Positions 1,261 through 60,891 of a stretch of 64,000 nucleotides of DNA are shown piece after piece. The notes under the pieces are model-generated. The model saw only the letters and a program-made list of their open reading frames with translations. It was not told the origin of the DNA and searched no databases. The stretch lies in IMG/VR virus record IMGVR_UViG_3300028666_000022, positions 1 through 64,000 of that record. One strand, given 5' to 3'. How positions within the stretch are numbered: position 1 is the first letter of the stretch; each line of letters begins with the position of its first letter. Made by a program: the position numbers and the translations under genes.

Positions 1261-1473
1261 GTTTTTGTTTTTATCGTTTATAAATAGAAAATTATATGTA
1301 AAAATCAAATAAATACAACGCTTTTTAATGATTATTTTCATTTAATTTTCGAAAACAAAAATATATTTAAATTTTAAATAAACAAAACAAATTAAATATT
1401 TTTTAAATTTATTATTATTTATGAATAATTTAGTTATATTTGTAAAAATAATTTTATATAAAATATATTCACA

Positions 1474-18730: not shown

Positions 18731-19564
18731 ATGAAAAGAATTGAAATGAAATTAATTAATTATAGTGGTAATACAAAAGCAACTGGTATATATTGTATAA
18801 AAAATCTAGTGAATAATAAAATATATATTGGTAGCACAAAAAGATCATTTGCAACAAGAAAAACGAGACATTTACGTTTATTGAGAAATAATACACATTA
18901 TAATGAGCATTTACAGAATGCTTGGAATTATTATAAAGAAGAAAATTTTAGTTTTGAAGTATTGTATATTTGTTTACCAAATGAATGTGAAAAATATGAA
19001 GGAGAATTCATGAAATTATATAATTCAAATAAAAGAGAATTTGGATATAACATTGCATGTGTATCAACATTTTGTTTTGATTATAAAATTTCCGAAAATC
19101 ATAATATTGAAAAAAGTATTCGAAAAAGAAAAAAATCAATAGAATTGAATGGATTATATACAACCGAAAGGGGTATACAAAAACCGTTCAAATTATATGA
19201 TATTAATGGTAAATTTATTAAAGAATATAATAGTTTTAAAGATTTTTTTAGTGACAATAAAGGTTCAAAAGCACATGTATCAACTATTTTAAGTAATAGA
19301 AAACTTTTATATAAAAATAATAATATAATATTATTTTCTAACGACAATCTTTCTGATGAAGATATTTTAATCGCAAAAAATAAAATAAGGAATATAAAAA
19401 AAATTGATTTATTTGATTTAAATAATAATTATATTAAAACATTTAATTCAGCAATTGAATGTGCTAAATTTATTGGATGTAAAGATGCTGAAATTAGAAT
19501 GTGTTGTACAAATAGAAGAAGTAGAATTAAAAATTATGTAACTAAATATAAAAAAAATGAATAA
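18731..19564 (+). CDS. Free-standing GIY-YIG homing endonuclease with NUMOD1-like C-terminal repeats
   Basis: GIYCIKNLVNNKIYIGST, HYNEHLQNAWN, GYNI; YDINGKFIKEYNS and FDLNNNYIKTFNSA repeats. Confidence 0.9.
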   Translation: MKRIEMKLINYSGNTKATGIYCIKNLVNNKIYIGSTKRSFATRKTRHLRLLRNNTHYNEHLQNAWNYYKEENFSFEVLYICLPNECEKYEGEFMKLYNSNKREFGYNIACVSTFCFDYKISENHNIEKSIRKRKKSIELNGLYTTERGIQKPFKLYDINGKFIKEYNSFKDFFSDNKGSKAHVSTILSNRKLLYKNNNIILFSNDNLSDEDILIAKNKIRNIKKIDLFDLNNNYIKTFNSAIECAKFIGCKDAEIRMCCTNRRSRIKNYVTKYKKNE

Positions 19565-23110: not shown

Positions 23111-24142
23111 ATGAAAGATTCAGCAATTAAGTTCGATTTTAATGATATAACAATAATACCTACAGTTCTAAGTGACATTGATTCAAGAAGCGAAATAAAT
23201 CCATTTTTAGGTGTAAATTTACCAATATTTACTGCACCTATGGATATGGTAATCAATGAAAATAATATACATATATTTGAATCAAACAATATTAATATTT
23301 GTTTACCCAGAAATATTAAGTATGAAAAAATAAAAAATGAAAATTATTTTTATTCATATGGACTTGATGAAATTATTGAAAAATATAATGATGGTGTAAA
23401 ATTACCAAAAAGAGTATTGATTGATACTGCTAATGCACACATGTTAAAAACATTTAATATTTCCAAAGCATTAAAAGAAAAATTTGGTAATGAAATTGTA
23501 TTAATGGTTGGTAATATTGCAAATCCCGAAACATATAGAAAATATTGTGAAATTGGTGTTAATTGGCTAAGAGTTGGAATTGGCGGGGGTTCAGTGTGTA
23601 CAACTTCGGCTAATGTTTCTATACATTTTGCAATGGCTTCATTAATTAATGAATGTTATTTAATTTCCAAAGAATTTGAAAATCCAACAAAAATAATTGG
23701 AGATGGTGGATTTAAAAATTTTGCTGATATAATTAAAGGTCTTGCATTAGGATCATCAGCAATTATGCTTGGTGGAATTTTTAATAAAACATTGGAGAGT
23801 TGTAGTGATACGTTTATTTTAGATGATGAAAACGATTATATTAGAGTCGATTATGAAGAATCATTAAAACTTTTTAATGAAGGTTGTAATCTATATAAAT
23901 ATTATAGGGGGATGTCAACCAAAGAAGTTCAAAAAATTTGGAATAGAAAAGAATTAAAAACTAGTGAAGGTATAACTAAATTTAATAAAGTAGAATATAT
24001 TCTTCCTAAATGGTGTGAAAATTTTACTGATTATTTAAGAAGTGCTATGTCATATACTGGTGCAAGAACATTAAATGACTTTATTGGCAAAGTTGAATTT
24101 TGTCAAATCACAAAAAATGCATATGAGCGATTTAATAAATAA
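23111..24142 (+). CDS. GMP reductase / IMP dehydrogenase family
   Basis: FDFNDITIIP, APMD, IDTANAH, GNIA, VGIGGGSVCTT, IIGDGG, MLGG, YRGMST, LRSAMSYTGAR. Confidence 0.9.
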   Translation: MKDSAIKFDFNDITIIPTVLSDIDSRSEINPFLGVNLPIFTAPMDMVINENNIHIFESNNINICLPRNIKYEKIKNENYFYSYGLDEIIEKYNDGVKLPKRVLIDTANAHMLKTFNISKALKEKFGNEIVLMVGNIANPETYRKYCEIGVNWLRVGIGGGSVCTTSANVSIHFAMASLINECYLISKEFENPTKIIGDGGFKNFADIIKGLALGSSAIMLGGIFNKTLESCSDTFILDDENDYIRVDYEESLKLFNEGCNLYKYYRGMSTKEVQKIWNRKELKTSEGITKFNKVEYILPKWCENFTDYLRSAMSYTGARTLNDFIGKVEFCQITKNAYERFNK

Positions 24143-36422: not shown

Positions 36423-38390
36423 AACAAAATGATAATAATTGCAAACATAAGATATGCTGATGAACCAAGCGAATTGATTCCATTAACTAAAATGAATATT
36501 AAATTTGTTAAAAGATATGGCGATACAAAAATAGGTTATTATTCTCTTAATTATAATGATGTTAATAATTTTGGATATGCTTCATTAGGTAAAGAATTAC
36601 CCGAAAGTTATTTCTTAAATAAGAAAGTAAAATATATTAATTCAAAATACATTAAATAAGTGTTAAATAATTTGGAATACATAAACTTTTGTTATATCTT
36701 TGATAGCATAAACCAATAAACAAATAAGATTATGAAAACTAAAGTAAATAATACCAGAAAAGAAATTACCTACAACAAAATAGTTAATTTTGAAAACAAT
36801 GAAATTACTGTCTTAGATGGTGTATTCAATTATGGTGACATACATAATGAAGGTAAAGTTTTTAAGGGTGCAACGGGTTCAAAATTTGAGGTTGTTTCAA
36901 AAAAACAGTATTGTAATACAATGCAAAAAAAGAACGTAATTGATAAATTGGAGGATCTTGAAATTCCTGAACATTTTGGCAAGGGTAAAAGTGCTTTAAA
37001 TAAATGTTATTTAGCAATGAAAGTAAATAATGAGATTGAAGATTTTATGTTTGATCTTAGTTATTTTGAATTGTGGGATTATTTAAGAGAAGAACTTAAT
37101 TTAAGTTTAGATCAGGCATATATTTTTAATTGTATTGGTGGTGGTCGTTGTTTTGAAAAAGATTTTCAGGGCAATATTAACCCTGAATTATCAGAAGTAA
37201 TAAGAGAATACGAAAGCTAATAATTAATGTACTTTTTGCCCTGCTCTGAAATAAAAGCAGGGTTTAGTTAGTAGAAACCAAAAGATATGATGTTATGAAA
37301 AATATTATAATTGATAACTACCTAAAAGCTAAATCAGTGTTTAATAAGGCTGATGAAGATTTACACAAATATTTCAAAAAGAAACATGAGAAAAGTATTA
37401 ATGATGCAACCTCATTAGAAGAACTTAATCAAATAAAAGAACAATTGAGAATTATGCCAGAGAGTGTGGGAAAAGTTCTTTTGTTTAGAGAAATTATAAT
37501 TAAAGAAGAAAATATTAAACAATCTTTGTAACAAACAATGTCCAATGTACGTATAGTATATATAAATCAATAAACAAATAATGTCATGAGCTATAGAATA
37601 ACTAAAAAAGATATTGAAAGACAAGTTAATATTTTAGCTGAACTTTCAAATACAAAGAAAACCGAAGATTGTAAGCAATACCTTGCTATTGATTATGCAC
37701 CTGTTTATGGTGGTTATCGTTTGGTAATGGTAGGAAGTGAAAACGGTGCACATTACGGTGCATTTAATCAATCTTCATGCTGTAGTAGAATGAGTGCAAA
37801 AGAATTTAGTTTTTATCTTAGTGGTTTAATTTCTGGTATTGAATCAGTAAAGAAAAATAGTGTTATAGGAAATTTATAATTAAGTTTCCTTCTTAAACAT
37901 TTTATTTTTATTATACATTTTTAAACCAAAACAATTATGAACCAGTCAATAAAATACTTTGAAGTCTTTAGAAGTAAATTTGATAAGAAAAATAATATTG
38001 CTTCTATCAATACTATTGCTATTTTCACAGATACTTTTAAAAGAATTAGTGATAACTATACACAATGTTCATTTAAAAATTATGGGTATGAGTGCTTAAT
38101 GCCAATGGCTATGAAAAAATATGTAGCTATTAAGGCAGTAACAGCACAATTCATAAATGATTGTTGTAAAGAGATAACAGTTGATAAGGTAGATCAAATA
38201 TTAATACAGGAAGTTAACAAAAGATAAAACGATCAATGTACATATTAATAACTGAGATTATGAAAATATAAATATTAATTTTTCATAAGGGATTTTTTAT
38301 AATTTTTTATAAAAAAGATTCTAAAGAAATAGAAAAGAGAAAAAAGTTTTGTGTGTAAGCCCCCAAAAAGTAATAATATTTACAAATAAT

Positions 38391-38492
38391 ATGAAAAACA
38401 AAGAACTAAGATCAAAACTAAATTTAGAACTAAATTCAGAACTATATTCAGAACTAAGATCAGAACTAGATTCAGAACTAACTTCAATATAA
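38391..38492 (+). CDS. SELx-repeat micro-protein (33 aa)
   Basis: MKNKELRSKLNLELNSELYSELRSELDSELTSI*, built from 12-nt TCAGAACTANNN units. Confidence 0.6.
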   Translation: MKNKELRSKLNLELNSELYSELRSELDSELTSI

Positions 38493-38669
38493 GAATTAAT
38501 AAATTATCCCATACTACCAACAATATTTAATATTAATTATTGTTACAAACTCAGTATTAATGCTATTTATTGAAAGGTTCATTAACAGTATGTTTTACAT
38601 ATTTTTATATAGTTAAAGTACAATTAAAACATAATTAACTTGGTTAAAATCAAATTTAGAAAAAGCATT

Positions 38670-38855
38670 ATGAAAAACAAAGAACTATATTCAGAACTAA
38701 ATTCAGAACTATATTCAGAACTAAGATCAGAACTAGATTCAGAACTATATTCAGAACTAAATTTAGAACTAAGATCAAAACTATATTCAGAACTATATTC
38801 AGAACTAAATTCAGAACTAGATTCAGAACTAAATTCAGAACTATCTTCAATATAA
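38670..38855 (+). CDS. SELx-repeat micro-protein (61 aa); 12-nt tandem repeat
   Basis: MKNKELY(SELx)n..SSI*. Shares its start (ATGAAAAACAAAGAACTA) and 3' flank (CTTCAATATAAGAATTAATAAATTA) with 38391-38492. Confidence 0.7.
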   Translation: MKNKELYSELNSELYSELRSELDSELYSELNLELRSKLYSELYSELNSELDSELNSELSSI

Positions 38856-38933
38856 GAATTAATAAATTAACCTTCCTGTAACAAAAGATATTTATTCTCG
38901 TATAGTATTTTATAAACCAAAAATAAAACTATT

Positions 38934-39392
38934 ATGACACCAGAAGAAATAATAAACGGGAATATATTAATAGCTGAATTTTTAAATTGGGACACCTGCG
39001 AATATATTCAAAGAATAACTAACTCAAAACATCCTTTATATAAGATTAAAAAAGAACCAATAACAGTTTTTTGTTTACCAATTGATCACCCTATTGTTAA
39101 CGATATCTATACAGATAGACCCGGATTTAGTTGGAATTATGACAAAGAAGATGAAAACGGGAATACTATAATAAGATTAATATTCTTTAATGAAGATTTA
39201 ATTTTTCACTCTTCATGGAATTGGTTAATACCAGTTATTGATAAAATTACCTCAACAAATGATTATTTTGATTTTAAAGATAAAACAACTAGCATTGTAG
39301 ATGAAGGAGGTATTTTTATTAATTACAGGTTTATTGAAAACACATTTGAGCAAGTAATAGAGTTTATTAAGTATTATAATAGTATTCAATAA
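38934..39392 (+). CDS. Conserved hypothetical phage protein
   Basis: NILIAEFL...FHSSWNWLIPVIDKI...V.EFIK.YN pattern, recalled from Bacteroidota phages. Confidence 0.6.
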   Translation: MTPEEIINGNILIAEFLNWDTCEYIQRITNSKHPLYKIKKEPITVFCLPIDHPIVNDIYTDRPGFSWNYDKEDENGNTIIRLIFFNEDLIFHSSWNWLIPVIDKITSTNDYFDFKDKTTSIVDEGGIFINYRFIENTFEQVIEFIKYYNSIQ

Positions 39393-39481: not shown

Positions 39482-40063
39482 ATGGAAACCAATACAAATT
39501 TATTAAAAGCATTAGCCTTAATGCAATTCTTAGGTAATAATTATATTCTAATTAATGATACTGAAGATCCTGATCTTTTTCAGGCTTTTGAAGGTAATGA
39601 AATAGAAGAAAGAGATAAATATATTTTATATTGTTTCGAAAAAAATCTTACTGAAGAAGATTTTACCTTTCTTGAGTTCTGTAATGAAAACCTTACCGAA
39701 GTAGAAGGAATTGAAGGCGATGAAGAAAGAGAGAATTATATGGTTTTAACTGATGAAGAAGCTCAAGAAAAAGTAACCGAATATATAAAAGAATCTATTT
39801 GGGCTTTTAATGCTGATTTTATTATCGGTGAATGTGAATTGGATTTTTCAGGTGAAAAAAGTTTACAAAAAATGCAAAGTGATTCTTGTGAAAATTGTAA
39901 CGATTTTTTACTATCATTAGTTGAAAAAACCTGTGGTATTGAGACATTTGTTGACGATGCAATAAGATCAGATGGTAGAGGCCATTTTATGAGTTCTTAT
40001 GATAGTAATGAAAATGAAGAAACTGTAGAAGGTGAAACATTTTATATTTATAGAATAAATTAA
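39482..40063 (+). CDS. Acidic early phage protein
   Basis: YMVLTDEEA, WAFNADFI, DGRGHFMSSYD..E, YIYRIN; early cassette upstream. Confidence 0.6.
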   Translation: METNTNLLKALALMQFLGNNYILINDTEDPDLFQAFEGNEIEERDKYILYCFEKNLTEEDFTFLEFCNENLTEVEGIEGDEERENYMVLTDEEAQEKVTEYIKESIWAFNADFIIGECELDFSGEKSLQKMQSDSCENCNDFLLSLVEKTCGIETFVDDAIRSDGRGHFMSSYDSNENEETVEGETFYIYRIN

Positions 40064-41404: not shown

Positions 41405-42379
41405 ATGAGACACATTAATAACCTTAAAAAAATTAACGATTTTCTTTTATCCTTAGATATTCCTTTTAGAAATGAAGGAAATATTTTTTATTTAAACGAA
41501 GACAAATTTCAAATTCGTTATGTAGATTCAGAAAATCATAAAATGGATTATGAGAAAAGATTTGGCATTAAAGGCATTCCACATAATTACTTTATTAACA
41601 TAACAAAAAAGAATAAAGAATTAGGCATTAGAACGATGTGGATCAAAGATTGGGAATTAGAGGAAACTAAAACAATTACTAGTATAGAAGGAAATGTATT
41701 GACTGATTATAACCGTAAATGGAATGTTTTACAGTCATATATTAAAACTGCAACGGGTAAAATTAATAACCGTGTCTTTGCCAGAGATTGTGAAATAAAA
41801 CAAATAACAAATAAAGAACTTAGACCGTTTTTAGATGAAAATTGTTTCTACGGTTATAGAAGTTCTAATATTAATTTGGGTTTATATCTTAAGAAAGATA
41901 AGAATAATGTTAAAGCTGGTACATTATTAATGTGCTATACATTTGGACACCCTTTCTTTGGAAAGGGTTTGTACGATGTTGAAATAATTAGGGTAGCTAC
42001 AAAACTAAATCACCAAGTAATTGGCGGTGCAAGTAAATTATTAACTAATTTCTTAAAAAATTATCCGGTTTTGAATATAGCTGGTAAAGAAGTTAATGTT
42101 AATAAAATAGTTTTTATAGTCGATGCTGATCACAATGATGCTAAATCTTTAGATACTTTAGGTTTTACTTTTGTCAGTCATTCTGGTAATGGTTTTATGA
42201 ATGTTGAGGCAGCAACAGGAAAAGTATTTCATCGTCAACCAATGCACCATAAACTTATCATGGAAAGAATGGCAAAGGGTGAAGTTTATAGCGTTGCTAA
42301 TGCTGGCTCAATTATTTATACAATAGATAAAAATGAGTATTTGAAAAAACTTGATAATAAAACAGAGGTTGAAAACTAA
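41405..42379 (+). CDS. Hef-like / GNAT-fold (Mom-like) phage protein
   Basis: FARDCEIKQI..FLDENCFYG..LGLY..YTFG..EIIRVATKLNHQVIGGASKLL..D..LGF; ECF-type promoter upstream. Confidence 0.6.
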   Translation: MRHINNLKKINDFLLSLDIPFRNEGNIFYLNEDKFQIRYVDSENHKMDYEKRFGIKGIPHNYFINITKKNKELGIRTMWIKDWELEETKTITSIEGNVLTDYNRKWNVLQSYIKTATGKINNRVFARDCEIKQITNKELRPFLDENCFYGYRSSNINLGLYLKKDKNNVKAGTLLMCYTFGHPFFGKGLYDVEIIRVATKLNHQVIGGASKLLTNFLKNYPVLNIAGKEVNVNKIVFIVDADHNDAKSLDTLGFTFVSHSGNGFMNVEAATGKVFHRQPMHHKLIMERMAKGEVYSVANAGSIIYTIDKNEYLKKLDNKTEVEN

Positions 42380-42777: not shown

Positions 42778-44715
42778 GAATAATTAAAATATGTATTAGT
42801 ATAAATCAAACCAAAATTATTATGTATACAAAAGGAAATTGGACAATAGACGGTTCACAAATAGTATCTGTAGAAAACCATAAAGAAATGGATCAATCAA
42901 ACGAAACTATTTGCGATTTTAATCCCGAAACAGAATATCCAACAGTACACGAAAGAAGTGTAAAAGAATCTTTTGAAAATGCTAAACTTATTTGTAAAGC
43001 TCCACAAATGTATGAAGCTATCAAAGAAGTATTAGATCTATTCGATGGTAATGGTGTTCCAAATATCGAATGGATTAAAAATCGACTTACTGAAAGTATA
43101 TCTTAAAATAAATTAAATCTTATGCGAAGACATAAATTATTATCTGAAATATTTGAACATGCTAAAGTTATTGGAGCAAATACAAATACATTAGCTTTTT
43201 TAATAGCAACAATGACAGATAAAGCACTTACAAAATTTCATAAAGAATTTATGAAAAAACAACCATATAAAGAAAATAACAAATAATCTAATCTTATGTC
43301 AAGATTCATCCTTAGAAACCAAGATAAAATATCAAAAGCTTTAGGTAAGGATTATGTTAAGCTTTTATTAGATAGCCTTAAGGATCATTTTAATTCTAAT
43401 AAGGAAATAGAAGAACATACATATGAGAATCTAAAGTATAAGATAATACACATACAGAATGTACAAAAGAATACTGATTCAATATTTGAGTTTGCAATAG
43501 TAAAGAAAACATTCGATGTTTATACTCTTGCTTATTATTCTTGTATGAGTTAAAAACCTAAAATAAATAATATCATGACTGTAGATGAATTTATAATAGT
43601 ATTACAAAATCTGAATCCTGCTTTAAGAGCAAAGGAAATTGTAATAACTGCACCAAATGGATTACAGTTTGAACCAAAAGTAAAACAACAACTAATTGAA
43701 CCCTATAATATTTTTGGTGGTATTGAAAACGTTAAAAGCATGGTAATAACTTATGAATAAATGTTTATTAACAATGTACATAATTAATACCATAAGAAAA
43801 TGAAATATAATTCAATTGTATTATTAAAAAATAATGAACCAGTTAAACTATTTGATAACTGGTTCAATGCAGGTAAATGGACTGATGAGAATATTAAATC
43901 AGAACATACTTTATATTCATTTAAAAAACTTAATTATTTTAAATCATTATTATACAAATTAGAAATATGGTTATGAATAAAATAAACTTTTCCATGAGTA
44001 GAATGTACAATTATTTTATTTTTTCGAAAACACTAGATAAAATAAAATCAACACTAAGAAGAGATTTAGATTCAAAACTAGAATCAGATCTATTTACTGA
44101 ATTATACTTAAAACTAGATTCAGAATTAGAAGTAGAATTCTATGATGAACTAGATTCAGATATAGCAAGATCTATTTACAAAATTATTTAAATAAAACCA
44201 AATGAAAAATATTTTATTAAAAATTGGCGATACTGTAGAATTATATAATGGAACTAAAGGTACTGTTAGTGCTTTGAACTTAGAAACATATGAAATTGAA
44301 ATATCTAATCCAAATTCATATCCACAATGGTTTCATAAAATGAATATTAAAACCTTAAATAGTAAAGAAGTACTAGCTCAAGATTTAATAATTGAACCTT
44401 ATTTTTTGTAACATTTCAATCTTATCTCACGTATAATATAAAAACAATACTATATGAAAACAATAATTGTAATTTCAATAATTTATCTTATTAGTTTTGT
44501 CGGTGCTTATTTCTTTATTAAAAAAGCATATTCTAAAAATGGTAAATGGTTTGATCTTAATCCAGATTTTGTTGATTTTTTAATTGTTATTTTACCTTTA
44601 AGTAATACAATATTAGGTTTTATGTTTATCTTTGGTGTTTGGAGAAAAGATAGAAAGAAATATGATCATAACCTATCTAAATTCTTTGGAGTTAAAAAAT
44701 TATAATGATATTTAC

Positions 44716-44783: not shown

Positions 44784-45361
44784 ACTGTTTTAAAAAGATT
44801 TGATGAGATGGTAAATATTGAATACAATAAAAATTTTAACCTTAATTTTATTTTCAATGTCATTGATAATTTATATTTTACTTTAGTTGATTTAGTGCAG
44901 CAAGAAGGTAGAATGATATTTGCTTCTGAATTAGATGAGATAATATAATAACATGTCTTATGAAGAATAAAATATTAGTTGATGCTTTACATCAAAAAGG
45001 AAATTATCTTAATATGGAAAATATTAATTTAAATGTAGATTTAAAAATGAGTTTTGGTGAAGATTTAGAGACATTTCACAGAGAATTTGATGTGGCATTA
45101 TTAATTTCATTATATAATAATTAAATAATTTTATGAAAAATATAATTATTGATATTCTACTAAAAAGAGAACTATGTAAGATGAAAAGTATTATTAATTC
45201 TGTTCGAATGAATGATGATAACATAGAGGATTATTTAAATACTAATTTATATTTAATATTGAAAGCAAACTTAATATTTGAAATAAATAATGACTTTGGT
45301 ATTAATTTAGATACAGAACTAAGTTCTGATATAGATACTGAGTTTTTAAACTAATTGCTAA

Positions 45362-45712
45362 ATGAAAAAGTTTATAATAGACATATACAATAATAAGTTT
45401 CAGTTATATTTGGGTTTTACTTTGGTATCTGAGTCTGGTTTTAGTATTGAGCAACCAGATGAATTTTTTAATGAAAAATATTTTACACTATATGAATTAA
45501 AGACATTAGAGGAATTTCAGAGACAAGGATTTGCAAAATATTTATTATATCAGATATTTGATTATGTAAAGAATGAACTTAGGATTAATATTATTACATT
45601 AATTGTTTATAAAAATAATCATAGTGCAGTAAATTTATATTTAGATAGTGGATTTGAAATATATAATGACTATGATGATTCATATTCACTAATAAAAACT
45701 TTTGTCTTATGA
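45362..45712 (+). CDS. GNAT-family N-acetyltransferase
   Basis: EEFQRQGFAKYLL acetyl-CoA loop; LIVYKNNHSAVNLYLDSGF. Confidence 0.88.
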   Translation: MKKFIIDIYNNKFQLYLGFTLVSESGFSIEQPDEFFNEKYFTLYELKTLEEFQRQGFAKYLLYQIFDYVKNELRINIITLIVYKNNHSAVNLYLDSGFEIYNDYDDSYSLIKTFVL

Positions 45713-48700
45713 AAAATGAAGTTTTAAATAATAGTAATATGTTCTCTAATTTACATATGTTTCATAGTGAATTAGGTACTGACTTAGATTCTGAATTATT
45801 TTATAAAGTTTCAATTAGAAATGAATATGTTGAATTAAATGTTATTTTTTATGAGGAGTTAAATTTTGATAATTAATTAAAATAGATATTATATGAATAA
45901 TATTGAAAATTTAAATAGTTTGGAAAATAATTTATTTTTGTTACATAATAGTTTTAATATATTAACAAATAATACTCTAGATTTAGATTTATACTTTTTC
46001 GTTGATAAAACATTATGTGAAGAAATGGAAGTTGTTATATCATTAATTGAATTAGAATTAAAGTATGAATTACATTAAATAAATTTAGTAATGGTAAATA
46101 TTGAAAAAGAAATTTATTTGAAGAATAGTTATAATTTGTTTATATACTTATTAGAATGTTCTTTAGATTTTAAATTAGATGTTTATTTAAATGATAATTT
46201 ATATAATAATTTGAATGATGAATTAAGAATTGAATTAAGTAATATATTAAACGATGAGTTAAAATAGGTATATGAAAAACAAAGAGATTGTTTTAAAGAA
46301 GAAAGGAAAATTATATTATTCATTTGGTTCTAAAGATATTGATTTAAATGATGGGTTAAATAATATGATTAGAAAATCTATTAATAATAAGCTTTATTTT
46401 GAATTTAATGAATTATATTCTGATATTAATAACAACATAAATGATTTAGATGGTGATTTGTTTCGAGAATTGAGGTAAATATAATATTCGTATTATGATT
46501 AACAAAGTAGAGTTTATATTTCATCATTTAGATATTTTACGTAGTGATTTGACTATTGATTTAGATGATAAATTAAAGTATAATTTTTCTATATTATTAA
46601 GTAGGAATTTATATATTAATTTACGTTTAGATATGAGTAATGAATTTGATGTTGAAATAGAAAATGATATAAAACAATTATAGTTATGCTTAATAAAGTA
46701 ATAAAACTAGAATTAGCTGAATTTTTTGTCTATGGTTTAGGAAACGAAATAGAAAAAGAATTATCTATGACGAACTTATCCTATTGTAATTTAAGTTTAG
46801 AATTATATGATACTATATATGATAATTATAATAATTTGGATGACGAATTAAAGAATGATTTAAATTAATATATTCATATGAAAAACAATAAAACATTAGA
46901 GTTTGAATTAAGAAGTAATTTATATGCTAGATTAAATTCTATGTTTGATTTTAAATTTGATTTAATATGTGAATTAGATAGAAAATATAATTTAGATTTG
47001 AGGCAGGAAATTTTTATTGAATTTGATGATGAATTGACATGGAATGAAATAAATATTATATAAATTGTATGAAAAACATTGAACTTATACATTCATATCC
47101 TTTTACTTATAAATTATATGATCTTACTGATGATTTAATTATAGATACAATAAGCAGTAATTTAAATCATAAAACGTTTGATGATATTAATATAATTGAT
47201 TTAGATGAATTAAGATCAGAACTATCTTTAATATTAGAATAAATATTTATATGGTTAATAAGGAAATAATTGGAGTAAATATAATAGAATTTGATGATTT
47301 ACTTCTTGTTGATTTAAAACAATTAAGGTTTAATGAAATTGAATACGGGCTTGATGATTATATTTATATTAATTTAATTAGAGATGTTTATAATACATTA
47401 CATAATGAATTAGAGATTATATTATGGGATGAAATAGAAATTATATAAATGATATGAAAAATTTTGAAACATGTCTTTTGCTTGAAAGGAAAATAAATCT
47501 GGATATTTATGATTCTTTATATAAAGATATATTAGGTGAAATCAGTTCTGTTTTATATTTTTATACATATGATAATGATTTGAGAATTGAGCTAACAACT
47601 GAATTAAATCGAGAATTAAAGTTTATGTTAGAATAATAAAATAATATGTTTTATGGTTAATAAAGAAATTAAATTAGAATCTATTTCAGAATATTTTAAA
47701 TGGGAAATCACATTAGATTTAGATTTTGCATTAGATTCAAAAGGTAATTTAGTTAAAGACTCTAATGAATTAACAAAAGAATTTAAGATTGAATATCTTG
47801 ATGATATACCTCAAAATTATACCAGAGTTTATCTTTATGGTGTATTTGAAGTAATTAAGGATTGTATTAGATCAAATAAGAAATTTATAAAGTTTAATGA
47901 AGAACCAATACGTGTAATGATTAAAACCACTGATGATTGGTCACCAAATTTTGACAACAACAAAGTAAAATTATCTTATCTTGGATTAATAGCTAAAAAT
48001 ACATATAGAGTATGTATTTGGGGTGCTGATGATTGTGGAATGGAATATGATACTCCAAATAAAAATGATGCAAAAACAATGTTTGAAAAATTAAAACAAC
48101 AAGGAATTGTTACTAAAAAGGAATTGGAAAAATTAAAATTTAATTTTTGTTAAGATATAATATGAAAAATAAAATTCTGATTCTTTGTTTTGATTCAAGT
48201 CTTTTTAGTGAGTTAACTACTGAAACATTACATATTCAGGATCATATATTTGGTTTTAATATGTATGTTGAAATTAATGACTTTGATGATATTTTAGAAT
48301 TAGAATTAAATTTGTAACAAACAAGATTTTAATTAAAAAACAAACATTATGAAAACATTTGGAGAAATTGCTAAAAGTCATGGATTTGATTCTGTTAGTG
48401 ATTTTTATAATAATGTCAATAAAGAAATTAATGTGGCTAAAAATAAATCATTTAATGTTGGCGATAAAGTTAAACTAAAAACAATTTATAATGCCACACA
48501 TTTTGGAAAAGAAAATATATTATCTAAAAACACAACATTTATCATAACCGAAAAAAGTAATTTTACTTTAGATAGTTATAGTATAAAAATTGAAGGTTAT
48601 GATAATTGGTTTTGTGCATCTGTTTTTGAGCTTTGTGTATAATAATTAATAATAGTTTTATTGTATTATTTTAATATTATATTCAATTATTTTGTAACAA

Positions 48701-51272: not shown

Positions 51273-52304
51273 ATGAAAACATTAGAAGATTTAACGCCCG
51301 AAATTAAGGCAAAAATTCCTATGTACAAAGAAAGATGTACTAAAGATCTATATTCCGGCGTGGAATATGATAATTTTAATCCTGAACAAAGTACTGCTTA
51401 TGTAGATAAGTTGTATGAGATATGTGGATTTGAAAAACCAGTTGTAATCTTTGCTGATGATCCAAATGATTACAAAAAGAAGTTAAAAGAACTTGAAAAA
51501 GGTAAGAAACTTCAGAAGGTATATGAACAGTATCTTAAGAAGAATAACTTGGAAAACGATGGTACAGTATTCGAAAATTGCAAATATGAGAATAAGTCTC
51601 ATTGGCTTTTCTTGTGTTCATCTTATCATAGAGTGTACCTAATGTGGTACAAGTTTATTCAAGATGAATTTCAAATAGATCATAAGAATAAAGATATTCT
51701 TAATTGGTTGTATGAAAATGCCAATAACAATATCGCTCGTTGTTTCTTTACAAAGATGTTTGTTCTTGTTCTTAGAATGCCTAAATACATTCATAGAAAT
51801 GCAATAGGTTTCCACAGTATAGATGGTGGTGCAATACATTGGCCTAATTATAATATGTATTACATTAATGGTCGTAGAATACCTGAAGATTTGTTCTTAA
51901 AAACAATCAATAAGGAACTTACTTTCGATGAGTTTATTAAGTTAACTGATGAAAATGTTAAGGGTTCATTGATAACTCTTATGAAAGAAAAGTTCGGAAA
52001 TGAATACTTAATGGCATTTCTTAATGCCAAAGTAATTGATGAACAAACTATTAATCATAGTAGTGGTTATAGTGAAGTAGTTAAACTTTGGCACACCAAT
52101 GAGAAATTTAGTTTTCTTGTTGATATTAACGGTGTTGAAAATCAACCTTATTCTTGGTTGGAACTTCATTGCCCCTCAACTGGTTCGATGTTTTTAATTG
52201 ATACCAGTGCTCACTTTGATAATGCAATAGAAGCTTGTAAGTATCATAGACCTCAACAAATTCCTGCTGAATTGAAATATGATTTCAATGAGTTTAACAA
52301 CTAA
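51273..52304 (+). CDS. DUF6745-like protein lacking the usual internal tetrapeptide repeat
   Basis: LTPEIKAKIP.Y.E N-terminus, FEKPVVIFADDP, WYKFI, GFHSIDGGAIHWPNYNMYYINGRRIP, CPSTG..FLI; own TATATTTG promoter at 51223. Family assignment is from recalled motifs. Confidence 0.7.
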   Translation: MKTLEDLTPEIKAKIPMYKERCTKDLYSGVEYDNFNPEQSTAYVDKLYEICGFEKPVVIFADDPNDYKKKLKELEKGKKLQKVYEQYLKKNNLENDGTVFENCKYENKSHWLFLCSSYHRVYLMWYKFIQDEFQIDHKNKDILNWLYENANNNIARCFFTKMFVLVLRMPKYIHRNAIGFHSIDGGAIHWPNYNMYYINGRRIPEDLFLKTINKELTFDEFIKLTDENVKGSLITLMKEKFGNEYLMAFLNAKVIDEQTINHSSGYSEVVKLWHTNEKFSFLVDINGVENQPYSWLELHCPSTGSMFLIDTSAHFDNAIEACKYHRPQQIPAELKYDFNEFNN

Positions 52305-52316
52305 AAAGGTGTTTGA

Positions 52317-52362
52317 AAATAAGGAATTGGATAATGATCTTAAGTTATCCAATTCCTTATTT
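52317..52362 (+). terminator. 18-bp perfect hairpin after the DUF6745-like gene
   Basis: AAATAAGGAATTGGATAA-N10-TTATCCAATTCCTTATTT, overlapping the micro-ORF at 52309. Confidence 0.65.
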
Positions 52363-54598
52363 GATAATTTAAGACTAATGGATGATTTTAATATGTTGAA
52401 TTATGAAGAGCATATTGAATTGGGTAGTGAATTATGTTCCGATATATAATTTCAATGAATTTAACAACTAAAATGAAATTTGAGAATATAGAACTGGATT
52501 ATACTCTTCTGGAATTATCCTCCAGTTCTATGCTCATTGATTTAACTGATACATTTTCTTCAGATTTAGAATTTAGATTATTAACTAAAACAATTATAAT
52601 GTCAAACAGTGAAGAGTTTGTTGAATTAGCCGATAATTTATTTAATGAATTAAAATAATATTATTATGTTTGATAATAAAGAAATAGATAACAGTTTATT
52701 TATTAATATGTTTTCATTTGAAAATGAATTAAGATATAATAAAATATCTAATGATTTAGATAATGTAATAAAAGAATTTGTTTTAAATAGTTTAAGAATT
52801 GAAATGTCTGTTGTATTAGGTTTAGTGTTTTATCTTGAAATAATTAATAATTAAATTCATAATATGAAAAATAATGAAATTGCTAATGAACTAGATATTC
52901 CAATATCTAATATAATCTCTCTAAAGATATGTAAAGAAAACAATAGATTTAGTGCCAATATATCATACAGCAAAATATTTGATTTAATGAATGATGAAAT
53001 ATTTATAGATTTACGTAATGCAATTTATTCTAATATAAGACATGAATAATAAATGAAAAATAATATACTAATAGAAAATGAATTTATTGCTCTAAATAAC
53101 ATGGGTGATAATTTTATTAATGATTTAATAAGTGGATTAAATTTTCATGATGCATTAACTGAGCTACGGTTAATGATAAGAGTTAATGATTTAGAAGAAA
53201 TATTTTTTAAAGATTTTGATTTTTTTAATTAAAAATATAATATAAATAATGAAATTTCAGAATATTGAAATTGTTGATATGTTTTTTAAAAAATCAAATA
53301 TGTTCTTTCAAGATTTAAAATACTCAATTTTAGATCTTAAGTTAGATGGAGAATTATTTGATAAAATTATATTTGAGGGAGATACAACATTATTGAACGA
53401 AATTGCTAATGATTTAGAAGATGAATTAAAATGATTACTGAAACTAAGAACGATATTGAATTAAGAAAAATAAAACTATTGATTGAATCATTATATAATG
53501 ATTTATATATTAATATTCATATTGATTTAATGTTTAAAACCACCGATGAATTATTTGATGGATCATTAGGTGGATTAGAAAATGATATTGATAATGAATT
53601 AAAACAATGAATAATAGTGATATTGCATTAGATTATATGTTATCAAAAAATAATTTTATTTTTAATAATGATTTTAATGTTAAATTAGATATGACACTAC
53701 AACATCAATTAATAAATCAACTTAGAATTAGATTATTTAGTGATTTATTAAATGAAGTTTACGATGAAACAGAAATAATAACCATATGAAAAATTATGAA
53801 ATAAGTAAAATATTATCTTTTAAATTAGAATTTATTTCTGATATAACAGATAGATTTAATTATCATACTCATAAAAATATATATTTAGATTCTCTTGAAT
53901 TAATTGAACTTTTATTAGATGATTTAAATAGTGAGTTACAATTAGATTTAAAATAATAGAATGAAAAATGTTACTCTTGAAGATTTGGATGAAAAAATAA
54001 TATTTCTTGATAATGATTTCGGATTATTTATGATTGAAATTTGCTCATATGGTTTAAATGATTATTTATATAGAGAATTTAATGAACTATTTGCAGATTT
54101 ATTTATAGAGATTAATAACGAAATTCAAATAAATAATTAAATTCATATTATGAAAAATATTGAAATTGCAAACCGAAGGCAAAATATTAAAGCAATTATT
54201 AATTTGGAAGATAAATTACACGATTTTTTATATTCTTTCTTTAATGAAAATGATGAAATAAATATTGATTTACTCAATGAATTAGATCCAATCTTAAAAA
54301 ATAATTTACGAGAAGAGTTATTTAGTTTAAATATTGAAATCTTTATAATAATATAATATTGATTATGAAAAACATTGAAATGCTTTTAGATTTAGAGTTA
54401 AAATTAGATCCTAATTCAGGTACTATATTATTTTTAGAATTAAGATCAGCAGTAAATTCAAAATTATTTAATTTATTCCCTTTTACAGAACAAGAATTAA
54501 TACTATATTTAGATATTGATATTTAATTAAAATTTTTCTTGCGTATTTAAAAATAATAGTATATATTTGCTACATAAAAACAATTTAAAATTAAAAGT

Positions 54599-54970
54599 AT
54601 GAAAATTCTAAAACAAGTAGGTCATCAAGGTGACACACAATGGTTTGCAATAGATGCAGTACCAGAAAATGCTAAGTTGTGTAAGAAACAATTTATTGCA
54701 GCAAGTGAAAAATCAGGCAACGTACATGCTCTTAGTGGAAATTACGATATGTACGAGTATGAGGACGGATTCGTAATTGATGTGAAAGATGATTGCGCAA
54801 TGCTTAATCATACAGCAATATCAGAACTTAACGAAAAAACTTGGAATAATCCTCAAGTACTTCCTCCACGTGATCATAGAAGTTCTGAGATTAAGAAGGG
54901 TGTTTATTTTGTAGGCATTCAAAGAAGGTTTAATCCTTTGAGTAAGCTTATGGAGAAAGTTAAGGATTAA
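54599..54970 (+). CDS. QGD/His-motif beta-rich protein, recalled as the usual DUF6745 partner
   Basis: HQGD, ASEKSGNVHAL, LNH..DH, GVYFVGIQRRF..KVKD; own TATATTTG promoter at 54562. Confidence 0.65.
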   Translation: MKILKQVGHQGDTQWFAIDAVPENAKLCKKQFIAASEKSGNVHALSGNYDMYEYEDGFVIDVKDDCAMLNHTAISELNEKTWNNPQVLPPRDHRSSEIKKGVYFVGIQRRFNPLSKLMEKVKD

Positions 54971-57175
54971 GAATAACAAAAATTAAAAATTTAAAAGCTA
55001 TAATGGTAATTATATCATAATTATTGTTATGGCTTTTGTTATTAAAAATGTAGGTATGAAATTTGAAAACTATATAGCAATTGATCAATTAGATAATATT
55101 TTATTTGATTATTTTAAAATATCGAAAGAAACCACATATAGTTTAGATAGATTTATTAATACTGAATTATTAATGGAGCTAAGAAATGAATTAGAAGATC
55201 AATTAGAAATTGAAACATATGAAAAATATTGTATTATTTGAAGAATTAAATTCTAAGCTTATTATTGATGATGAATTAACTACATTAAATAATAAACTAA
55301 AATTTAATTTAAAACAAGCAATTAACCATCAAATTTTTGATGAATCATATTATTCATTAAGAAAAGAAATTATTAATGAATAAGAATAACATGAAAAATA
55401 CTATATTAAATAATAATTTGGATTATTCTTTAGATGGAGAATTACCAACAATATTAGTTGAAAATATTCACAATATATTAATGTTCGATGTTTTAATTAT
55501 TGATTTAGATATATTATTTTAATATGAAAAATATTGAAGCAGGAAATGTTATTACAGAAAATTCAATTTTTATTAATTTAATATTAATATCTTCTGATTT
55601 ATATAATACTTCGTGGAATGAACTAGATATAAAATTAATTAAATCAACTAGTTCTGATGATGAATTTAGAGGTGATCACATGAAAGAATTAAATGATGAA
55701 ATATCAGAAGAATTATAATAATATGAAAAATACAATATCTGTTGATGCATTAGATTATGTATTAACAAAAAAATATTTTGATGATATTTTATCTCAAAAA
55801 TTATCAATAAAATTATTTGGAGAAATTAATGAAAAATTATATGTTGAATTATTTACTGAACTAAATTTGGGTTTAGATCCAACAATTGGTTCAATTTTAG
55901 AAATATGATTATTGTAACAAAATGCATTTATTATTCGTATATCAAAAGATAAAAATATAAAACTATGAAAAATATTGAAATGGATCGGTGTGACATCATA
56001 GGAATTGAATTTCTATTAATGTCAACATTAAAAAATAATATATTTATTAATAGTAAGAATGCTTTATATTATGAAACAAAAAAAATTTTTATTTCTAACT
56101 TTAATGAAGATTTGGATATTATTCTTCGTGATGAATTACATAATAATCTGTAACAAAATCATTCTTTTATTCGTATTATAAACCAAATTTAAAACACAAA
56201 TTTTATGAAAAAACAAGGCATTTATATTGAGAAACATTCAAAAACACAAACCAAGAAGTTATATAATAATGGTTATCTCACAATAAGATATTTGTTTCAG
56301 CCACATTCAATTAATTTCAAAAATGAAATGATTAATGATGACAATCAACATTTTTGTGGTGGATATAGTGTTAATAATATGGATTTATCTAACGATGCAC
56401 TTCTTAATCGAGTATTAGTCGGTAAGAAACCAATGGGTGTTATTTATGAAAGAGATGATGAAAAATTATATAATTATTTTAAAAATATTGACATAACTAA
56501 ATTTTTTGTTGAAGTATGTAAAAATACAATAACAAATTATAATTATATCATTGTTGCTTACAAAGGTAATTTTGATGATCTTTTTGATTTAGAAACATTA
56601 AAATCTGATTACAAAAATAGTGGAATTGATATAGATTTAAATGAAGTCAAAGGAAAAACACTCAAAGATTTTTTTGAAACTTGGGATGACAATCTTTGGA
56701 TTACTGGATTAATGTTAGGATATCCAATTGAAAATACTATTTCAATTTATAAAGATGGTGTGAGATGAAAACATTAAAAGTTAAATTTAAATATAGGTTA
56801 TTGGGACAATATTTTCCAATGATAACACAAGAATTAGTTAATGTTGAAAGTGATTCTAATGAAGAAGAAATGCAACAACAAATTAATTTTGCATATAAGG
56901 AATTTATTAAATATATTGGTAATAATGTTGTTGAAATATATCCATACGAAATTCTTTAAAATAAAAATTATCATGAGAAACTACGATAGGGATTGGTTTG
57001 AAAAATATGATGAACCGGGAAATAAAATTCTCAATCTAATTGGATTTGATGAAAATGATATTGAAATTTGTCATGAATATTTATGTGACAAAGATGATTG
57101 TAATTGTTCTGGACATTGGAAGGTTGGTAATGATAAAAATGTTCACACTTGGATTGGTCGACCTGTTTAAAAATA

Positions 57176-60509: not shown

Positions 60510-60891
60510 ATGAAAAATATTGAATATATCGTTGATTTAAATTTTATGCTTCCAAATAAAACAATTAAAATATATTGTATGAATAAAAATTTAACATTTA
60601 AATCATATAAAAAATTAAAAATTAATTTATTTGATGTATCTTATGATGAATTATATTTTGAATTATCAAGAATTTTCGAATTTGAATTAGATTATGAATA
60701 ATGTTGAATTTGAATGTTATTTACTTAATAACATTAAGCTTCCATTTAATTATCCTCTAAATGATATTAATTTGACAAATCATTTATATGTTAATATAAA
60801 AACACAATTATTTGGTACATCATTTAATGAATTATTTTCTGATTTAAATAATGATATTGCTAATGATTTAAATTTAATTTATCGTTTGTAA
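60510..60891 (+). CDS. Two further micro-protein family members (60510-60701, 60694-60891)
   Basis: MKNIE and MNNVE starts; the two are similar to each other (S[YF][DN]EL[YF]..L). Confidence 0.6.

What the first reader, a model, noticed from the sequence alone, without database searches (positions are those of the whole stretch)
38391..38855. Nascent family members made purely of a 12-nt SELx repeat suggest how the library is generated
Seen: two ORFs have an identical start (ATGAAAAACAAAGAACTA) and 3' flank but different numbers and orders of TCA-GAA-CTA-NNN units, with the fourth codon TAT, AAT, AGA or GAT. They encode 33 and 61 aa. 43967-44191 retains decayed copies of the unit (GATTCAAAACTA, GATTCAGAATTA). 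Inference: members are born from a slippage-prone tetrapeptide repeat and then diverge rapidly. This links the family to the SxLx repeat recalled from DUF6745 proteins.
Basis: partly seen in the sequence, partly recalled or inferred. Interest (0 to 1): 0.7.

Follow-up and report, generated by a model that had tools for sequence, protein, structure and literature searches.

The report
Tetrapeptide-repeat minigenes of a jumbo phage
Two tiny genes in a 340-kb phage are made almost wholly of one 12-base unit, change unit number between natural strains, and are the freshest members of a family of about 45 single-helix peptides that matches the repeat linker of DUF6745, a widespread phage protein family of unknown function.

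Summary
ORF1 (38391-38492, 33 aa) and ORF2 (38670-38855, 61 aa) share the same start and 3' flank and hold 7 and 14 in-frame units of TCA-GAA-CTA-NNN. A rhizosphere strain carries a 2-unit allele of ORF1, so the array slips in nature.

The link to the diverged peptides is statistically supported. Thirty-nine neighbouring minigenes of about 60 aa show Leu at lags 4/8/12 (z 13.8, 9.4 and 7.4) and 12-nt DNA periodicity. A profile built from them alone ranks ORF2, ORF1 and 43967-44191 as the top three other ORFs of the genome.

The DUF6745 recollection is right in substance. The family profile's best hits among 1.84 billion proteins are 300-720 aa proteins with an N-domain, 16-75 xS[E/Q]L units and a DUF6745 C-domain. 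The phage's own DUF6745-like gene (51273-52304) sits inside the cluster and lacks the array.

A related jumbo phage has one 509-aa repeat ORF at the syntenic site, and another has nothing there.

Two things remain open. The direction (arrays giving rise to the family, or an old member re-homogenised) is not shown, because only 43967-44191 keeps the array's rare CTA codon. Function is unknown; models give one long acidic helix. The closest analogues are the TAEL repeats of HsdS and the four-residue repeats of Rpn.

The parts
38391..38492 (+). ORF1, 33 aa: MKNK, then 7 units of the 12-nt repeat (38403-38486), then I-stop
   Evidence: A 2-unit allele (13 aa) occurs in runs X7 and X3.
38670..38855 (+). 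ORF2, 61 aa: MKNK, then 14 units (38682-38849), then I-stop
   Evidence: AlphaFold2 gives a single helix over residues 2-59, pLDDT 97. It is the best non-training hit of the family profile, 36.4 bits.
38493..38509 (+). 3' flank shared with 38856-38872 (GAATTAATAAATTA plus 3 nt); marks the end of the duplicated segment
38228..38390 (.). 163-nt spacer upstream of ORF1, not homologous to the 177-nt spacer (38493-38669) upstream of ORF2. Both are unusually long for this tightly packed genome.
   Evidence: No promoter or terminator excess and no Rfam family.
43967..44191 (+). 74-aa ORF whose C-terminal ~40 residues are a decayed copy of the array; the only intermediate form found
   Evidence: BLASTP to ORF2 E 1.7e-5. 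6 of 10 Leu codons are CTA against 6.8% in the genome, p 1.6e-5. 20.5 bits with the family profile.
44808..48317 (+). Tandem block of 14 minigenes of 46-73 aa (plus unrelated 45362-45712 and 166-aa 47653-48153): MKN-E start, Leu every 4th residue
50484..51215 (+). Four more minigenes directly upstream of the DUF6745-like gene
51273..52304 (+). DUF6745-like gene, 343 aa: N-domain plus C-domain, with no array at the junction ...KKNN|LEN... where homologues carry 24-40 xSEL units
   Evidence: 42-47% identity to P0012 and P0010 in both domains. hhalign against DUF6745 C-domains: probability 99.4%, E 4e-21. Atlas score 0.96 to DUF6745 clusters. Alignment. It is the only copy in the genome.
52279..54526 (+). 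Twelve minigenes filling the gap between the DUF6745-like gene and the conserved 123-aa gene
   Evidence: In G001 the syntenic site holds one 509-aa repeat ORF; in G002 it holds nothing.
54599..54970 (+). Conserved 123-aa gene (HQGDTQW...), the downstream synteny anchor in all three jumbo phages
55029..56153 (+). Six more minigenes
60510..60891 (+). Two outlying minigenes
   Evidence: P0038, P0052
62244..62423 (+). Outlying minigene with the LRIE motif

Best explanation
ORF1 and ORF2 are two copies of a protein-coding minisatellite. The copied segment runs from the start codon to about 20 nt past the stop. Its body is an in-frame 12-nt unit (TCA GAA CTA NNN) that expands and contracts by replication slippage or unequal recombination. 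Each unit adds four residues, about 6 A, to one continuous acidic alpha-helix with Leu at every fourth position.

The two ORFs are the youngest, most homogeneous members of a lineage-specific family of about 45 minigenes. Members start MKN-E, have a median length of 60 aa and a mean net charge near -6. The family surrounds the phage's DUF6745-like gene.

The same xS[E/Q]L array is the hallmark inter-domain helix of DUF6745-family proteins, where it runs 16-75 units. In this jumbo-phage clade the DUF6745 gene has no array, and the repeat DNA lives beside it as free-standing ORFs.

Shown here: the repeat, its polymorphism, the family's register, the profile relationship, the DUF6745 architecture and the synteny.

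Inferred: the family and the arrays descend from the DUF6745 linker, and the family is renewed by a cycle of slippage, whole-minigene duplication and decay.

Inferred with low confidence: the peptides act as linker-only helices whose length and variable fourth residue set which partner helix they pair with, as in RpnS/RpnL and the HsdS coiled coil.
For: Repeat and coding frame. Only the S-E-L-x frame carries an ATG and stays open on the gene-bearing strand.

Polymorphism. X7 shows a 60-nt (5-unit) deletion, with 72 nt on the shorter side of the joint. X3 shows the same junction. X2 and X6 carry the reference allele.

Youth of the arrays: every array Leu is CTA, a codon used for 6.8% of Leu genome-wide.

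Family register: Leu-Leu pairs at lag 4 number 137 against 52.6 +/- 6.1 in shuffles (z 13.8), with lags 3 and 7 depleted. Relative to Leu, position +1 is enriched in D/R/Y/K, +2 in N/D/S and +3 in E/D, which is the same register as L-x-S-E. DNA self-identity is 0.406 at lag 12 against 0.33-0.35 at other multiples of three.

Profile test: a profile built from the diverged members alone scores ORF2 36.4, ORF1 24.6 and 43967 20.5 bits, the top three of all other ORFs. Shuffles of those sequences reach at most 12.2.

Shared 5' end: ATGAAAAACAAAGA is also the start of 46272.

DUF6745 link.

Synteny.

Helix: pLDDT 96-97 for ORF2 and for a diverged member.

Known precedents for 12-nt helical repeats that tune pairing or spacing: PMC3874165 and bioRxiv 10.1101/2023.05.02.539157.
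Against: There is no evidence of transcription or translation; no RNA run was listed.

The 2-unit allele encodes only 13 aa, so ORF1 is not under length constraint.

Repeat sequences can converge. Arrays in homologues use other Leu codons (CTT, TTG), and xSEL arrays also occur in unrelated contexts, including a 63% GC contig.

Pairwise BLAST does not link the diverged members to each other.

The MKN start is common among unrelated genes of this AT-rich phage, so the junction similarity is weak evidence.

The oligomer prediction gave no answer.

The direction of evolution is unresolved.
Confidence: 0.6

Rival explanations
1. Re-homogenised old members. ORF1 and ORF2 are ordinary members of an old minigene family in which one 12-nt unit recently swept through the body by slippage. 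The family itself grows only by duplication of whole ~190-nt minigenes, and the arrays play no part in generating it.
For: The 38 diverged minigenes tested show no excess of the array's CTA codon (7.5% against 6.8%). Family lengths are narrow (median 60 aa), whereas array alleles span 13-61 aa. The minigene 5' ends are shared. The order ELRS-ELDS at the end of ORF1 resembles the family's C-terminal motif ELR[IS]EL.
Against: 43967-44191 is a decayed array with a CTA relic and a different N-terminus, so arrays do decay into family-like ORFs. G001 holds about 115 decayed units in one ORF with nested higher-order repeats, which shows that array growth itself creates new coding DNA at this locus.
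Confidence: 0.3
2. Non-coding minisatellite. The arrays are DNA-level repeats in intergenic spacers that merely happen to be open, and they encode nothing.
For: The upstream spacers are long (163 and 177 nt). No promoter-like excess was found. A 13-aa allele exists. No RNA evidence was found.
Against: The ATG and the next 11-14 nt are those of family minigenes. The frame that matches the family profile is the only one with a start. A unit length that is a multiple of three keeps the frame open. The same repeat is translated inside hundreds of large ORFs. There is no GC-skew turn or iteron-like context.
Confidence: 0.12
3. Debris of one long repeat ORF. The 'family' is the broken remains of a G001-like ORF of about 500 aa, not a set of genes.
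For: G001 has a single 509-aa repeat ORF at the syntenic place. Most minigenes give local BLASTP matches to it (composition correction was off, so the E-values are inflated).
Against: Each piece has its own ATG with a conserved MKN-E start, a length near 60 aa and tight or overlapping stop-start junctions such as ATGA. The matches to the long ORF are not colinear. G002 also has about 12 separate ORFs of 53-81 aa.
Confidence: 0.1
4. Convergence only. The similarity among the arrays, the minigenes and the DUF6745 linkers reflects a common biophysical solution (x-polar-acidic-Leu) and not descent.
For: The sequence is low-complexity. Homologues use different codons. xSEL arrays occur in unrelated proteins and at other GC contents. 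The HsdS profile also matches ORF2.
Against: The only DUF6745-like gene of the genome lies inside the cluster. An array ORF lies at the syntenic site in G001. The distribution is complementary: the three jumbo phages have array-less genes plus free-standing repeats, while G003/L028, P0008, P0010 and P0012 have arrays inside the gene.
Confidence: 0.15

Closest known systems
Inter-domain tetrapeptide array of DUF6745 (PF20530) proteins, mostly from phages
   Same: It is the same unit, x-S-[E/Q/K/N]-L, with the same variable residues (D, Y, R, N, H, G, S, C). The register is perfect over 16-75 units. The array follows a lysine-rich ...KN(K/N) junction that resembles the MKNK start of ORF1 and ORF2. 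A DUF6745-like gene lies inside the minigene cluster.
   Different: ORF1, ORF2 and the minigenes have no N- or C-domain and do not match PF20530. The phage's own DUF6745-like gene has no array. No paper in the library mentions DUF6745, so its function is unknown.
TAEL 12-bp repeats in the central conserved (coiled-coil) region of type IC HsdS subunits (EcoR124I/II, EcoDXXI)
   Same: A 12-bp unit encodes x-[A/S]-E-L, just over one helical turn. Copy number changes by recombination and alters the length of a helix that spaces two domains (PMC3874165). The PADLOC Type I specificity model matches ORF2 at E 1.4e-7 over its central region, positions 159-213 of 439.
   Different: HsdS has 2-4 units between two target-recognition domains. 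Here there are 7-14 units and no domains. The 39 diverged members and 43967-44191 do not match the HsdS model. No hsdM or hsdR context was seen.
Four-amino-acid (dodecamer) repeats of Rpn toxin-antitoxin proteins (RpnL/RpnS)
   Same: The repeats extend a long alpha-helix in a dimer interface. [quoted passage not shown] A small helix-only protein pairs with the long protein only when the repeat numbers match (bioRxiv 10.1101/2023.05.02.539157).
   Different: The Rpn units are one hydrophobic residue plus three charged residues or glycine (for example KGIE) and are few in number. The short form is encoded within the long gene. Rpn is a host defence nuclease. No sequence relationship to Rpn was seen.
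Canonical heptad coiled coils
   Same: Both are long amphipathic helices rich in Leu and acidic residues.
   Different: Leu recurs at lag 4, and lags 3 and 7 are depleted. On a regular helix this puts the Leu stripe on a steep right-handed path of about +40 degrees per unit, which is not a heptad pattern.

Membership tests
In-genome MKN-E minigene family (this phage) | Profile-level similarity to the diverged members | tested here: met
   A profile trained without them scores ORF2 36.4 and ORF1 24.6 bits, the top two of all other ORFs. 200 shuffles of each reach at most 12.2 and 9.8.
In-genome MKN-E minigene family (this phage) | Leu or another hydrophobic residue every 4th position, E/D just before it, a polar residue two before it, and a variable residue after it | tested here: met
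   The arrays are the idealised form of this register.
In-genome MKN-E minigene family (this phage) | Shared 5' end ATGAAAAAYAWWGAA and a length near 60 aa | tested here: inconclusive
   The 5' end is shared. ORF2 is 61 aa, but ORF1 is 33 aa in the reference and 13 aa in X7. MKN starts are also common in unrelated genes.
DUF6745 (PF20530) | Match to the PF20530 model (C-terminal domain of about 200 aa) | tested here: not met
   ORF1, ORF2 and six other family members gave no hit at E<=10. The whole genome gave no hit at E<=10.
DUF6745 (PF20530) | x-S-[E/Q]-L array as found between the N- and C-domains of family members | tested here: met
   Seven of the ten best hits of the family profile carry PF20530, and all hits above 200 aa hold 14-75 units in register. 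ORF1 and ORF2 correspond to that part only.
DUF6745 (PF20530), for the neighbouring gene 51273-52304 | Homology of the C-domain to DUF6745 | tested here: met
   PF20530 itself fails. However, hhalign gives probability 99.4%, E 4e-21, and the Atlas scores 0.95-0.96 to three DUF6745 clusters.
Type I R-M specificity subunit (HsdS) | Two target-recognition domains flanking the repeat helix | tested here: not met
   The products are 33 and 61 aa, and the match covers only profile positions 159-213 of 439. No Pfam HsdS domain was found.
Type I R-M specificity subunit (HsdS) | 12-bp unit encoding x-[A/S]-E-L in a helical spacer | tested here: met
   compared with PMC3874165.
Rpn L/S toxin-antitoxin | Number of four-residue repeats polymorphic among strains | tested here: met
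   2 against 7 units in ORF1.
Rpn L/S toxin-antitoxin | Short protein encoded inside a long nuclease gene, and pairing with it | tested here: not met
   ORF1 and ORF2 are free-standing, with no overlapping long ORF on the + strand. Pairing cannot be tested here.
Heptad coiled coil | Hydrophobic recurrence at lags 3/4/7 | tested here: not met
   Lag 3 has z -3.9, lag 7 has z -2.0 and lag 4 has z +13.8.

The most novel reading that the evidence does not exclude
A jumbo-phage clade has taken the repeat linker out of its DUF6745 gene and turned it into a self-renewing coding minisatellite. This spawns a library of about 45 single-helix peptides that differ in length and in the exposed fourth residue. 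The library would serve as decoys or modulators that pair with tetrapeptide-repeat helices of host or rival-phage proteins, such as DUF6745 proteins, the HsdS coiled coil or Rpn-type proteins. That would make it an anti-defence or inter-phage weapon diversified by slippage.
Probability: 0.1. Interest if true: 0.9.

Novelty: new variant of a known kind. Interest (0 to 1): 0.62.

Why it matters
In-frame 12-nt repeats that lengthen a helix and retune pairing or spacing are known from HsdS and Rpn, but only as a few units inside larger proteins. Three things here go beyond that.

1. The same principle is the defining, undescribed feature of a large, mostly viral family of unknown function (DUF6745), with up to 75 units.
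2. In one clade of jumbo phages the repeat exists as free-standing genes. These range from perfect, polymorphic arrays to about 45 diverged minigenes, and to a 509-aa repeat ORF in a relative.
3. The locus therefore offers snapshots of several stages by which repeat DNA may become a multigene family. It also gives a concrete handle (helix length) for working out what DUF6745 proteins do.

Tried and rejected
- Megablast of 36-46 kb against GenBank phages: no match.
- Exact-pattern scan of IMG/VR: seven hits, all unrelated 12-nt repeats, none at a homologous locus.
- Flank genes as synteny anchors (38934-39392, 39482-40063, 37586-37879): only distant hits in IMG/VR and none in G001 or G002, so the site of ORF1 and ORF2 cannot be compared across relatives.
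- Pfam and PHROGs on the peptides: nothing meaningful.
- PADLOC on the 39 diverged members and 43967-44191: no Type I specificity match, only chance-level Cas hits.
- Word-index protein search with the family alignment: found only itself.
- Word-index search with ORF2: found three small proteins with N-terminal xSEL arrays and other C-termini.
- Promoter and terminator scan and Rfam: nothing.
- Origin or iteron idea: rejected. There is no GC-skew turn, and a 12-bp spacing is out of helical phase.
- Homotetramer prediction for ORF2: 'no answer', not used as evidence.
- PDB sequence search with DUF6745 C-domains: no hit.
- RNA runs: none was listed.
- Logan contigs break inside the arrays, so the allele spectrum of ORF2 could not be read.
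- First whole-peptide Fourier test: diluted by register shifts and replaced by lag statistics.

Full report
**Context.** The window is the first 64 kb of a 339,898-bp IMG/VR virus record with direct terminal repeats, rated 100% complete. GC content is 25%. It is a jumbo phage. Its genes include a ribonucleotide reductase with an intein, a TnpB-like gene, GIY-YIG homing-endonuclease-like genes and two tRNAs. From about 32.9 kb onward nearly all genes are small and lie on the + strand. The phage occurs in at least 12 rhizosphere metagenome runs.

**The observation.** ORF1 (38391-38492) and ORF2 (38670-38855) are as described. Both start ATGAAAAACAAAGAACTA. Both then run through 12-nt units of the form GAA-CTA-NNN-TCA, 7 units in ORF1 and 14 in ORF2, and end ATA-TAA followed by GAATTAATAAATTA.
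- Tandem Repeats Finder reports period 12 with 7.1 and 13.6 copies.
- The variable codon is TAT, AAT, AGA or GAT, with ACT or TCT in the last unit.
- Rare variants (TTA for TCA, AAA for GAA) and a 48-nt block (N-Y-R-D units) are shared by the two arrays, so they have a common origin.
- Homology stops at the ATG on one side and about 17-27 nt past the stop on the other. The 163- and 177-nt upstream spacers are unrelated.
- The pattern is found nowhere else in the genome, and the reversed-pattern control gives zero matches.

**Slippage in nature.** Logan contigs break inside the arrays, but two results are informative.
- A 567-nt contig of run X7 runs from the ORF1 upstream spacer into the ORF, joins 38401 to 38462, and continues to 38710. 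That is a clean 60-nt (5-unit) deletion with 72 nt on the shorter side of the joint. In this allele a single 31-mer spans from the start-specific ACAAA to the end-specific ACTTCAAT, so it cannot be a repeat collapse. It encodes MKNK-ELDS-ELTS-I, 13 aa.
- Run X3 shares a nearby SNP (38373 A>T) and shows the same junction as a loose end. It also shows an ORF1 start followed by a Y unit instead of the reference R unit.

X2 and X6 carry the reference form. Unit number and order are therefore polymorphic among natural strains. The ORF2 alleles could not be resolved.

**Relation to the diverged peptides.** Pairwise BLASTP joins only ORF1, ORF2, 43967-44191 and one ORF at 326.8 kb. The tetrapeptide register is nevertheless strong in the diverged minigenes, with the two arrays and 43967-44191 left out.
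- In 38 diverged minigenes, Leu-Leu recurrence is 2.37, 1.98, 1.77 and 1.54 times expectation at lags 4, 8, 12 and 16, and is depleted at every other lag. Large proteins of the phage are flat.
- In 39 (46878-47063 added), lag 4 gives 137 pairs against 52.6 +/- 6.1 in 2000 shuffles (z 13.8). Lags 3 and 7, expected for heptad coiled coils, are depleted.
- Relative to the periodic hydrophobic residue, position +3 is E (2.3x) or D (1.7x), +2 is N/D/S, and +1 is D/R/Y/K. This is the L-x-S-E register of the arrays, including the same kind of variable residue.
- At the DNA level, self-identity is 0.406, 0.392 and 0.382 at lags 12, 24 and 36, against 0.33-0.35 at other multiples of three. Tandem Repeats Finder also picks up short period-12 tracts inside 45709-45876, 46091-46267 and 60694-60891.
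- A profile built from the 39 diverged members alone ranks ORF2 (36.4 bits, E 6e-10), ORF1 (24.6) and 43967-44191 (20.5) as the three best of all other ORFs in the genome. 200 shuffles of each reach at most 12.2, 9.8 and 9.5.

The minigenes share a 5' end, ATGAAAAAYAWWGAA. The start of 46272 equals the ORF1/ORF2 start over its first 14 nt. Spacers are tight or overlapping (-26 to +16 nt), median length is 60 aa and mean net charge is -5.8. I count 42 members in the window and about five more elsewhere in the genome.

**Structure.** AlphaFold2 gives one uninterrupted helix for ORF2 (residues 2-59, pLDDT 97.3) and for the diverged member 46091-46267 folded with the family alignment (residues 4-57, pLDDT 95.9). 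On a regular alpha-helix, a Leu every fourth residue puts the hydrophobic stripe on a right-handed path of about +40 degrees per unit. That is not a heptad coiled coil (inference from helix geometry). A four-copy complex prediction returned 'no answer' and is not used.

**The DUF6745 link.** The peptides do not match PF20530, nor does anything in the genome at E<=10. However, an exhaustive profile search of 1.84 billion representative proteins with the family alignment returned 59 hits.
- Eight of these 59 are the phage's own peptides. Nearly all the rest are 300-720 aa proteins matched in their first third.
- Seven of the top ten carry PF20530 at the C-terminus.
- Their sequences show an N-domain of about 70-90 aa, then 16-75 units of x-S-[E/Q/K/N]-L in perfect register, then the DUF6745 domain.

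The 343-aa gene at 51273-52304, in the middle of the minigene cluster, is 42-47% identical to P0012 and P0010 in both the N- and the C-domain. Its C-domain aligns to DUF6745 C-domains with hhalign probability 99.4%, E 4e-21. The ESM Atlas places it at 0.95-0.96 next to three DUF6745 clusters. It is the only such gene in the genome.

In the alignment it lacks the array exactly where P0008, P0010, P0012 and G003 have 24-40 xSEL units, directly after a ...(K/M)KN(N/K) junction. That junction (for example FKMKNN-LYSEL, VKNKKK-ELNSKLHLEL) resembles the MKNK-ELRSKLNLEL start of ORF1. I treat this as weak evidence, because MKN starts are common in this phage.

**Relatives.** Two other jumbo phages carry the array-less gene: G001 (327 kb, 64% identity) and G002 (334 kb, 57% identity). 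Downstream in all three lies a conserved gene of about 123 aa (window 54599-54970). Between the two anchors:
- G002 has nothing.
- G001 has one 509-aa ORF of about 115 decayed tetrapeptide units with nested higher-order repeats (Leu lag-4 enrichment 3.2x; Leu codons TTA/TTG).
- This phage has 12 minigenes.

G002 has about 12 family-like ORFs of 53-81 aa elsewhere. The smaller phage G003 and the contig L028 keep the array inside the gene, and no free-standing repeats were found within the 9-20 kb fetched. So array-less genes go together with free-standing repeat ORFs. This rests on a single clade and is therefore one evolutionary event at most.

**Direction of evolution.** Every Leu in the arrays is CTA, against 6.8% genome-wide, so the arrays are young. 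43967-44191 keeps 6 CTA among 10 Leu (binomial p 1.6e-5) and units 55-90% identical to the array consensus. It is a decaying array with a different N-terminus, the one clear intermediate.

The 38 diverged minigenes tested have background CTA use (7.5%), so nothing ties them to this particular unit. Their uniform length and shared 5' end fit duplication of a whole minigene.

My reading is that the locus evolves by three coupled processes: unit slippage, duplication of start-to-stop segments (as between ORF1 and ORF2), and decay. The arrays show that the first process is active now. Whether each family member began as a perfect array, or ORF1 and ORF2 are old members that were re-homogenised, remains open. 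I give the second reading about 0.3.

**Function.** Function is unknown, and no RNA run was listed. The nearest mechanistic precedents are two.
- The 12-bp TAEL repeats of type IC HsdS subunits. One extra unit lengthens the coiled-coil spacer and changes the recognised gap from N6 to N7 (PMC3874165). The PADLOC Type I specificity model matches ORF2 at E 1.4e-7 over its central helical region only and matches none of the other 40 aligned family members.
- The four-residue repeats of Rpn proteins. They extend a helix in the dimer interface and vary among strains, and the short RpnS blocks the long RpnL only when repeat numbers match (bioRxiv 10.1101/2023.05.02.539157).

By analogy I propose that the array is an evolvable helical spacer or pairing element in DUF6745 proteins, and that the free-standing peptides pair with such helices. 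This is inference with low confidence.

**Verdict.** Slippage and the DUF6745 link are now shown, and family membership is statistically supported. The claim that the arrays are the source of the library is plausible but unproven.

Noticed in passing
window 51273-52304: A clear DUF6745-family gene that PF20530 does not detect even at E<=10. Its close homologues P0008, P0010 and P0012 are also missed, so the Pfam model misses this branch of the family.
   Followed up: yes
L025:11060-12589 (G001): A 509-aa ORF of about 115 decayed tetrapeptide units with nested 24-, 48-, 72- and 132-nt higher-order repeats, 6 nt downstream of the array-less DUF6745 gene. The same gap is empty in L026 (G002).
   Followed up: partly
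window 47653-48153: A 166-aa ORF that starts like a family minigene (MVNKEI..., periodic L/D) and then continues into a longer unrelated-looking body. It may be a minigene fused to another domain.
   Followed up: no
genome 24454-24615(+), 211113-211292(-), 263467-263853(-), 326615-327027(-): Family-like small ORFs outside the main cluster, scoring E 1e-4 to 3e-3 with the profile of diverged members. Those beyond 64 kb lie outside the window.
   Followed up: partly
window 38140-38373: Runs X3 and X7 carry a variant strain. X3 differs at seven SNPs here, six in the 3' end of gene 37937-38227 plus 38373 in the spacer. X7, laid only from 38330, shares 38373 A>T. This is the same strain that has the 2-unit ORF1 allele.
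   Followed up: partly
L021 (ENA contig, 63% GC) and L020 (29% GC): Small proteins with an N-terminal xSEL array (TCG-GAG-CTG or TCT-GAA-TTG units) and unrelated C-terminal domains. The same tetrapeptide array recurs at very different GC contents and outside DUF6745 proteins.
   Followed up: partly
L010, L011, L015 (giant-virus MAG contigs) and L009, L012-L014: Exact matches to the 12-nt pattern in other viral contigs. When translated in the pattern's own S-E-L frame, most are interrupted by or flanked with stop codons. Whether they are coding there, and on which strand, was not checked.
   Followed up: no
window 6085-9855: The ribonucleotide reductase large subunit is interrupted by an intein with a LAGLIDADG endonuclease domain.
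   Followed up: no
window 14850-16028: A TnpB / IS605 OrfB-like gene (HTH, OrfB and Cas12f1-like TNB domains) inside a phage genome.
   Followed up: no
window 18731-19564 and 41405-42379, plus 11 more across the genome: A 13-member paralogue group. The one member scanned that gave a hit (18731-19564) has GIY-YIG and NUMOD1 domains, suggesting a large set of homing-endonuclease-like genes.
   Followed up: no
window 67-1341 (-), 12317-14818 (+), 23111-24142 (+): Auxiliary metabolic-looking genes: a radical SAM / lysine-2,3-aminomutase-like gene, a glycosyltransferase with DUF3431, UDP-galactopyranose mutase, and an IMPDH/GMP-reductase-like gene.
   Followed up: no
window, gene starts generally: No Shine-Dalgarno-like motif is visible upstream of the genes inspected, only A/T-rich leaders. 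This would fit a host that does not rely on Shine-Dalgarno sequences (for example Bacteroidota). The host was not determined.
   Followed up: no
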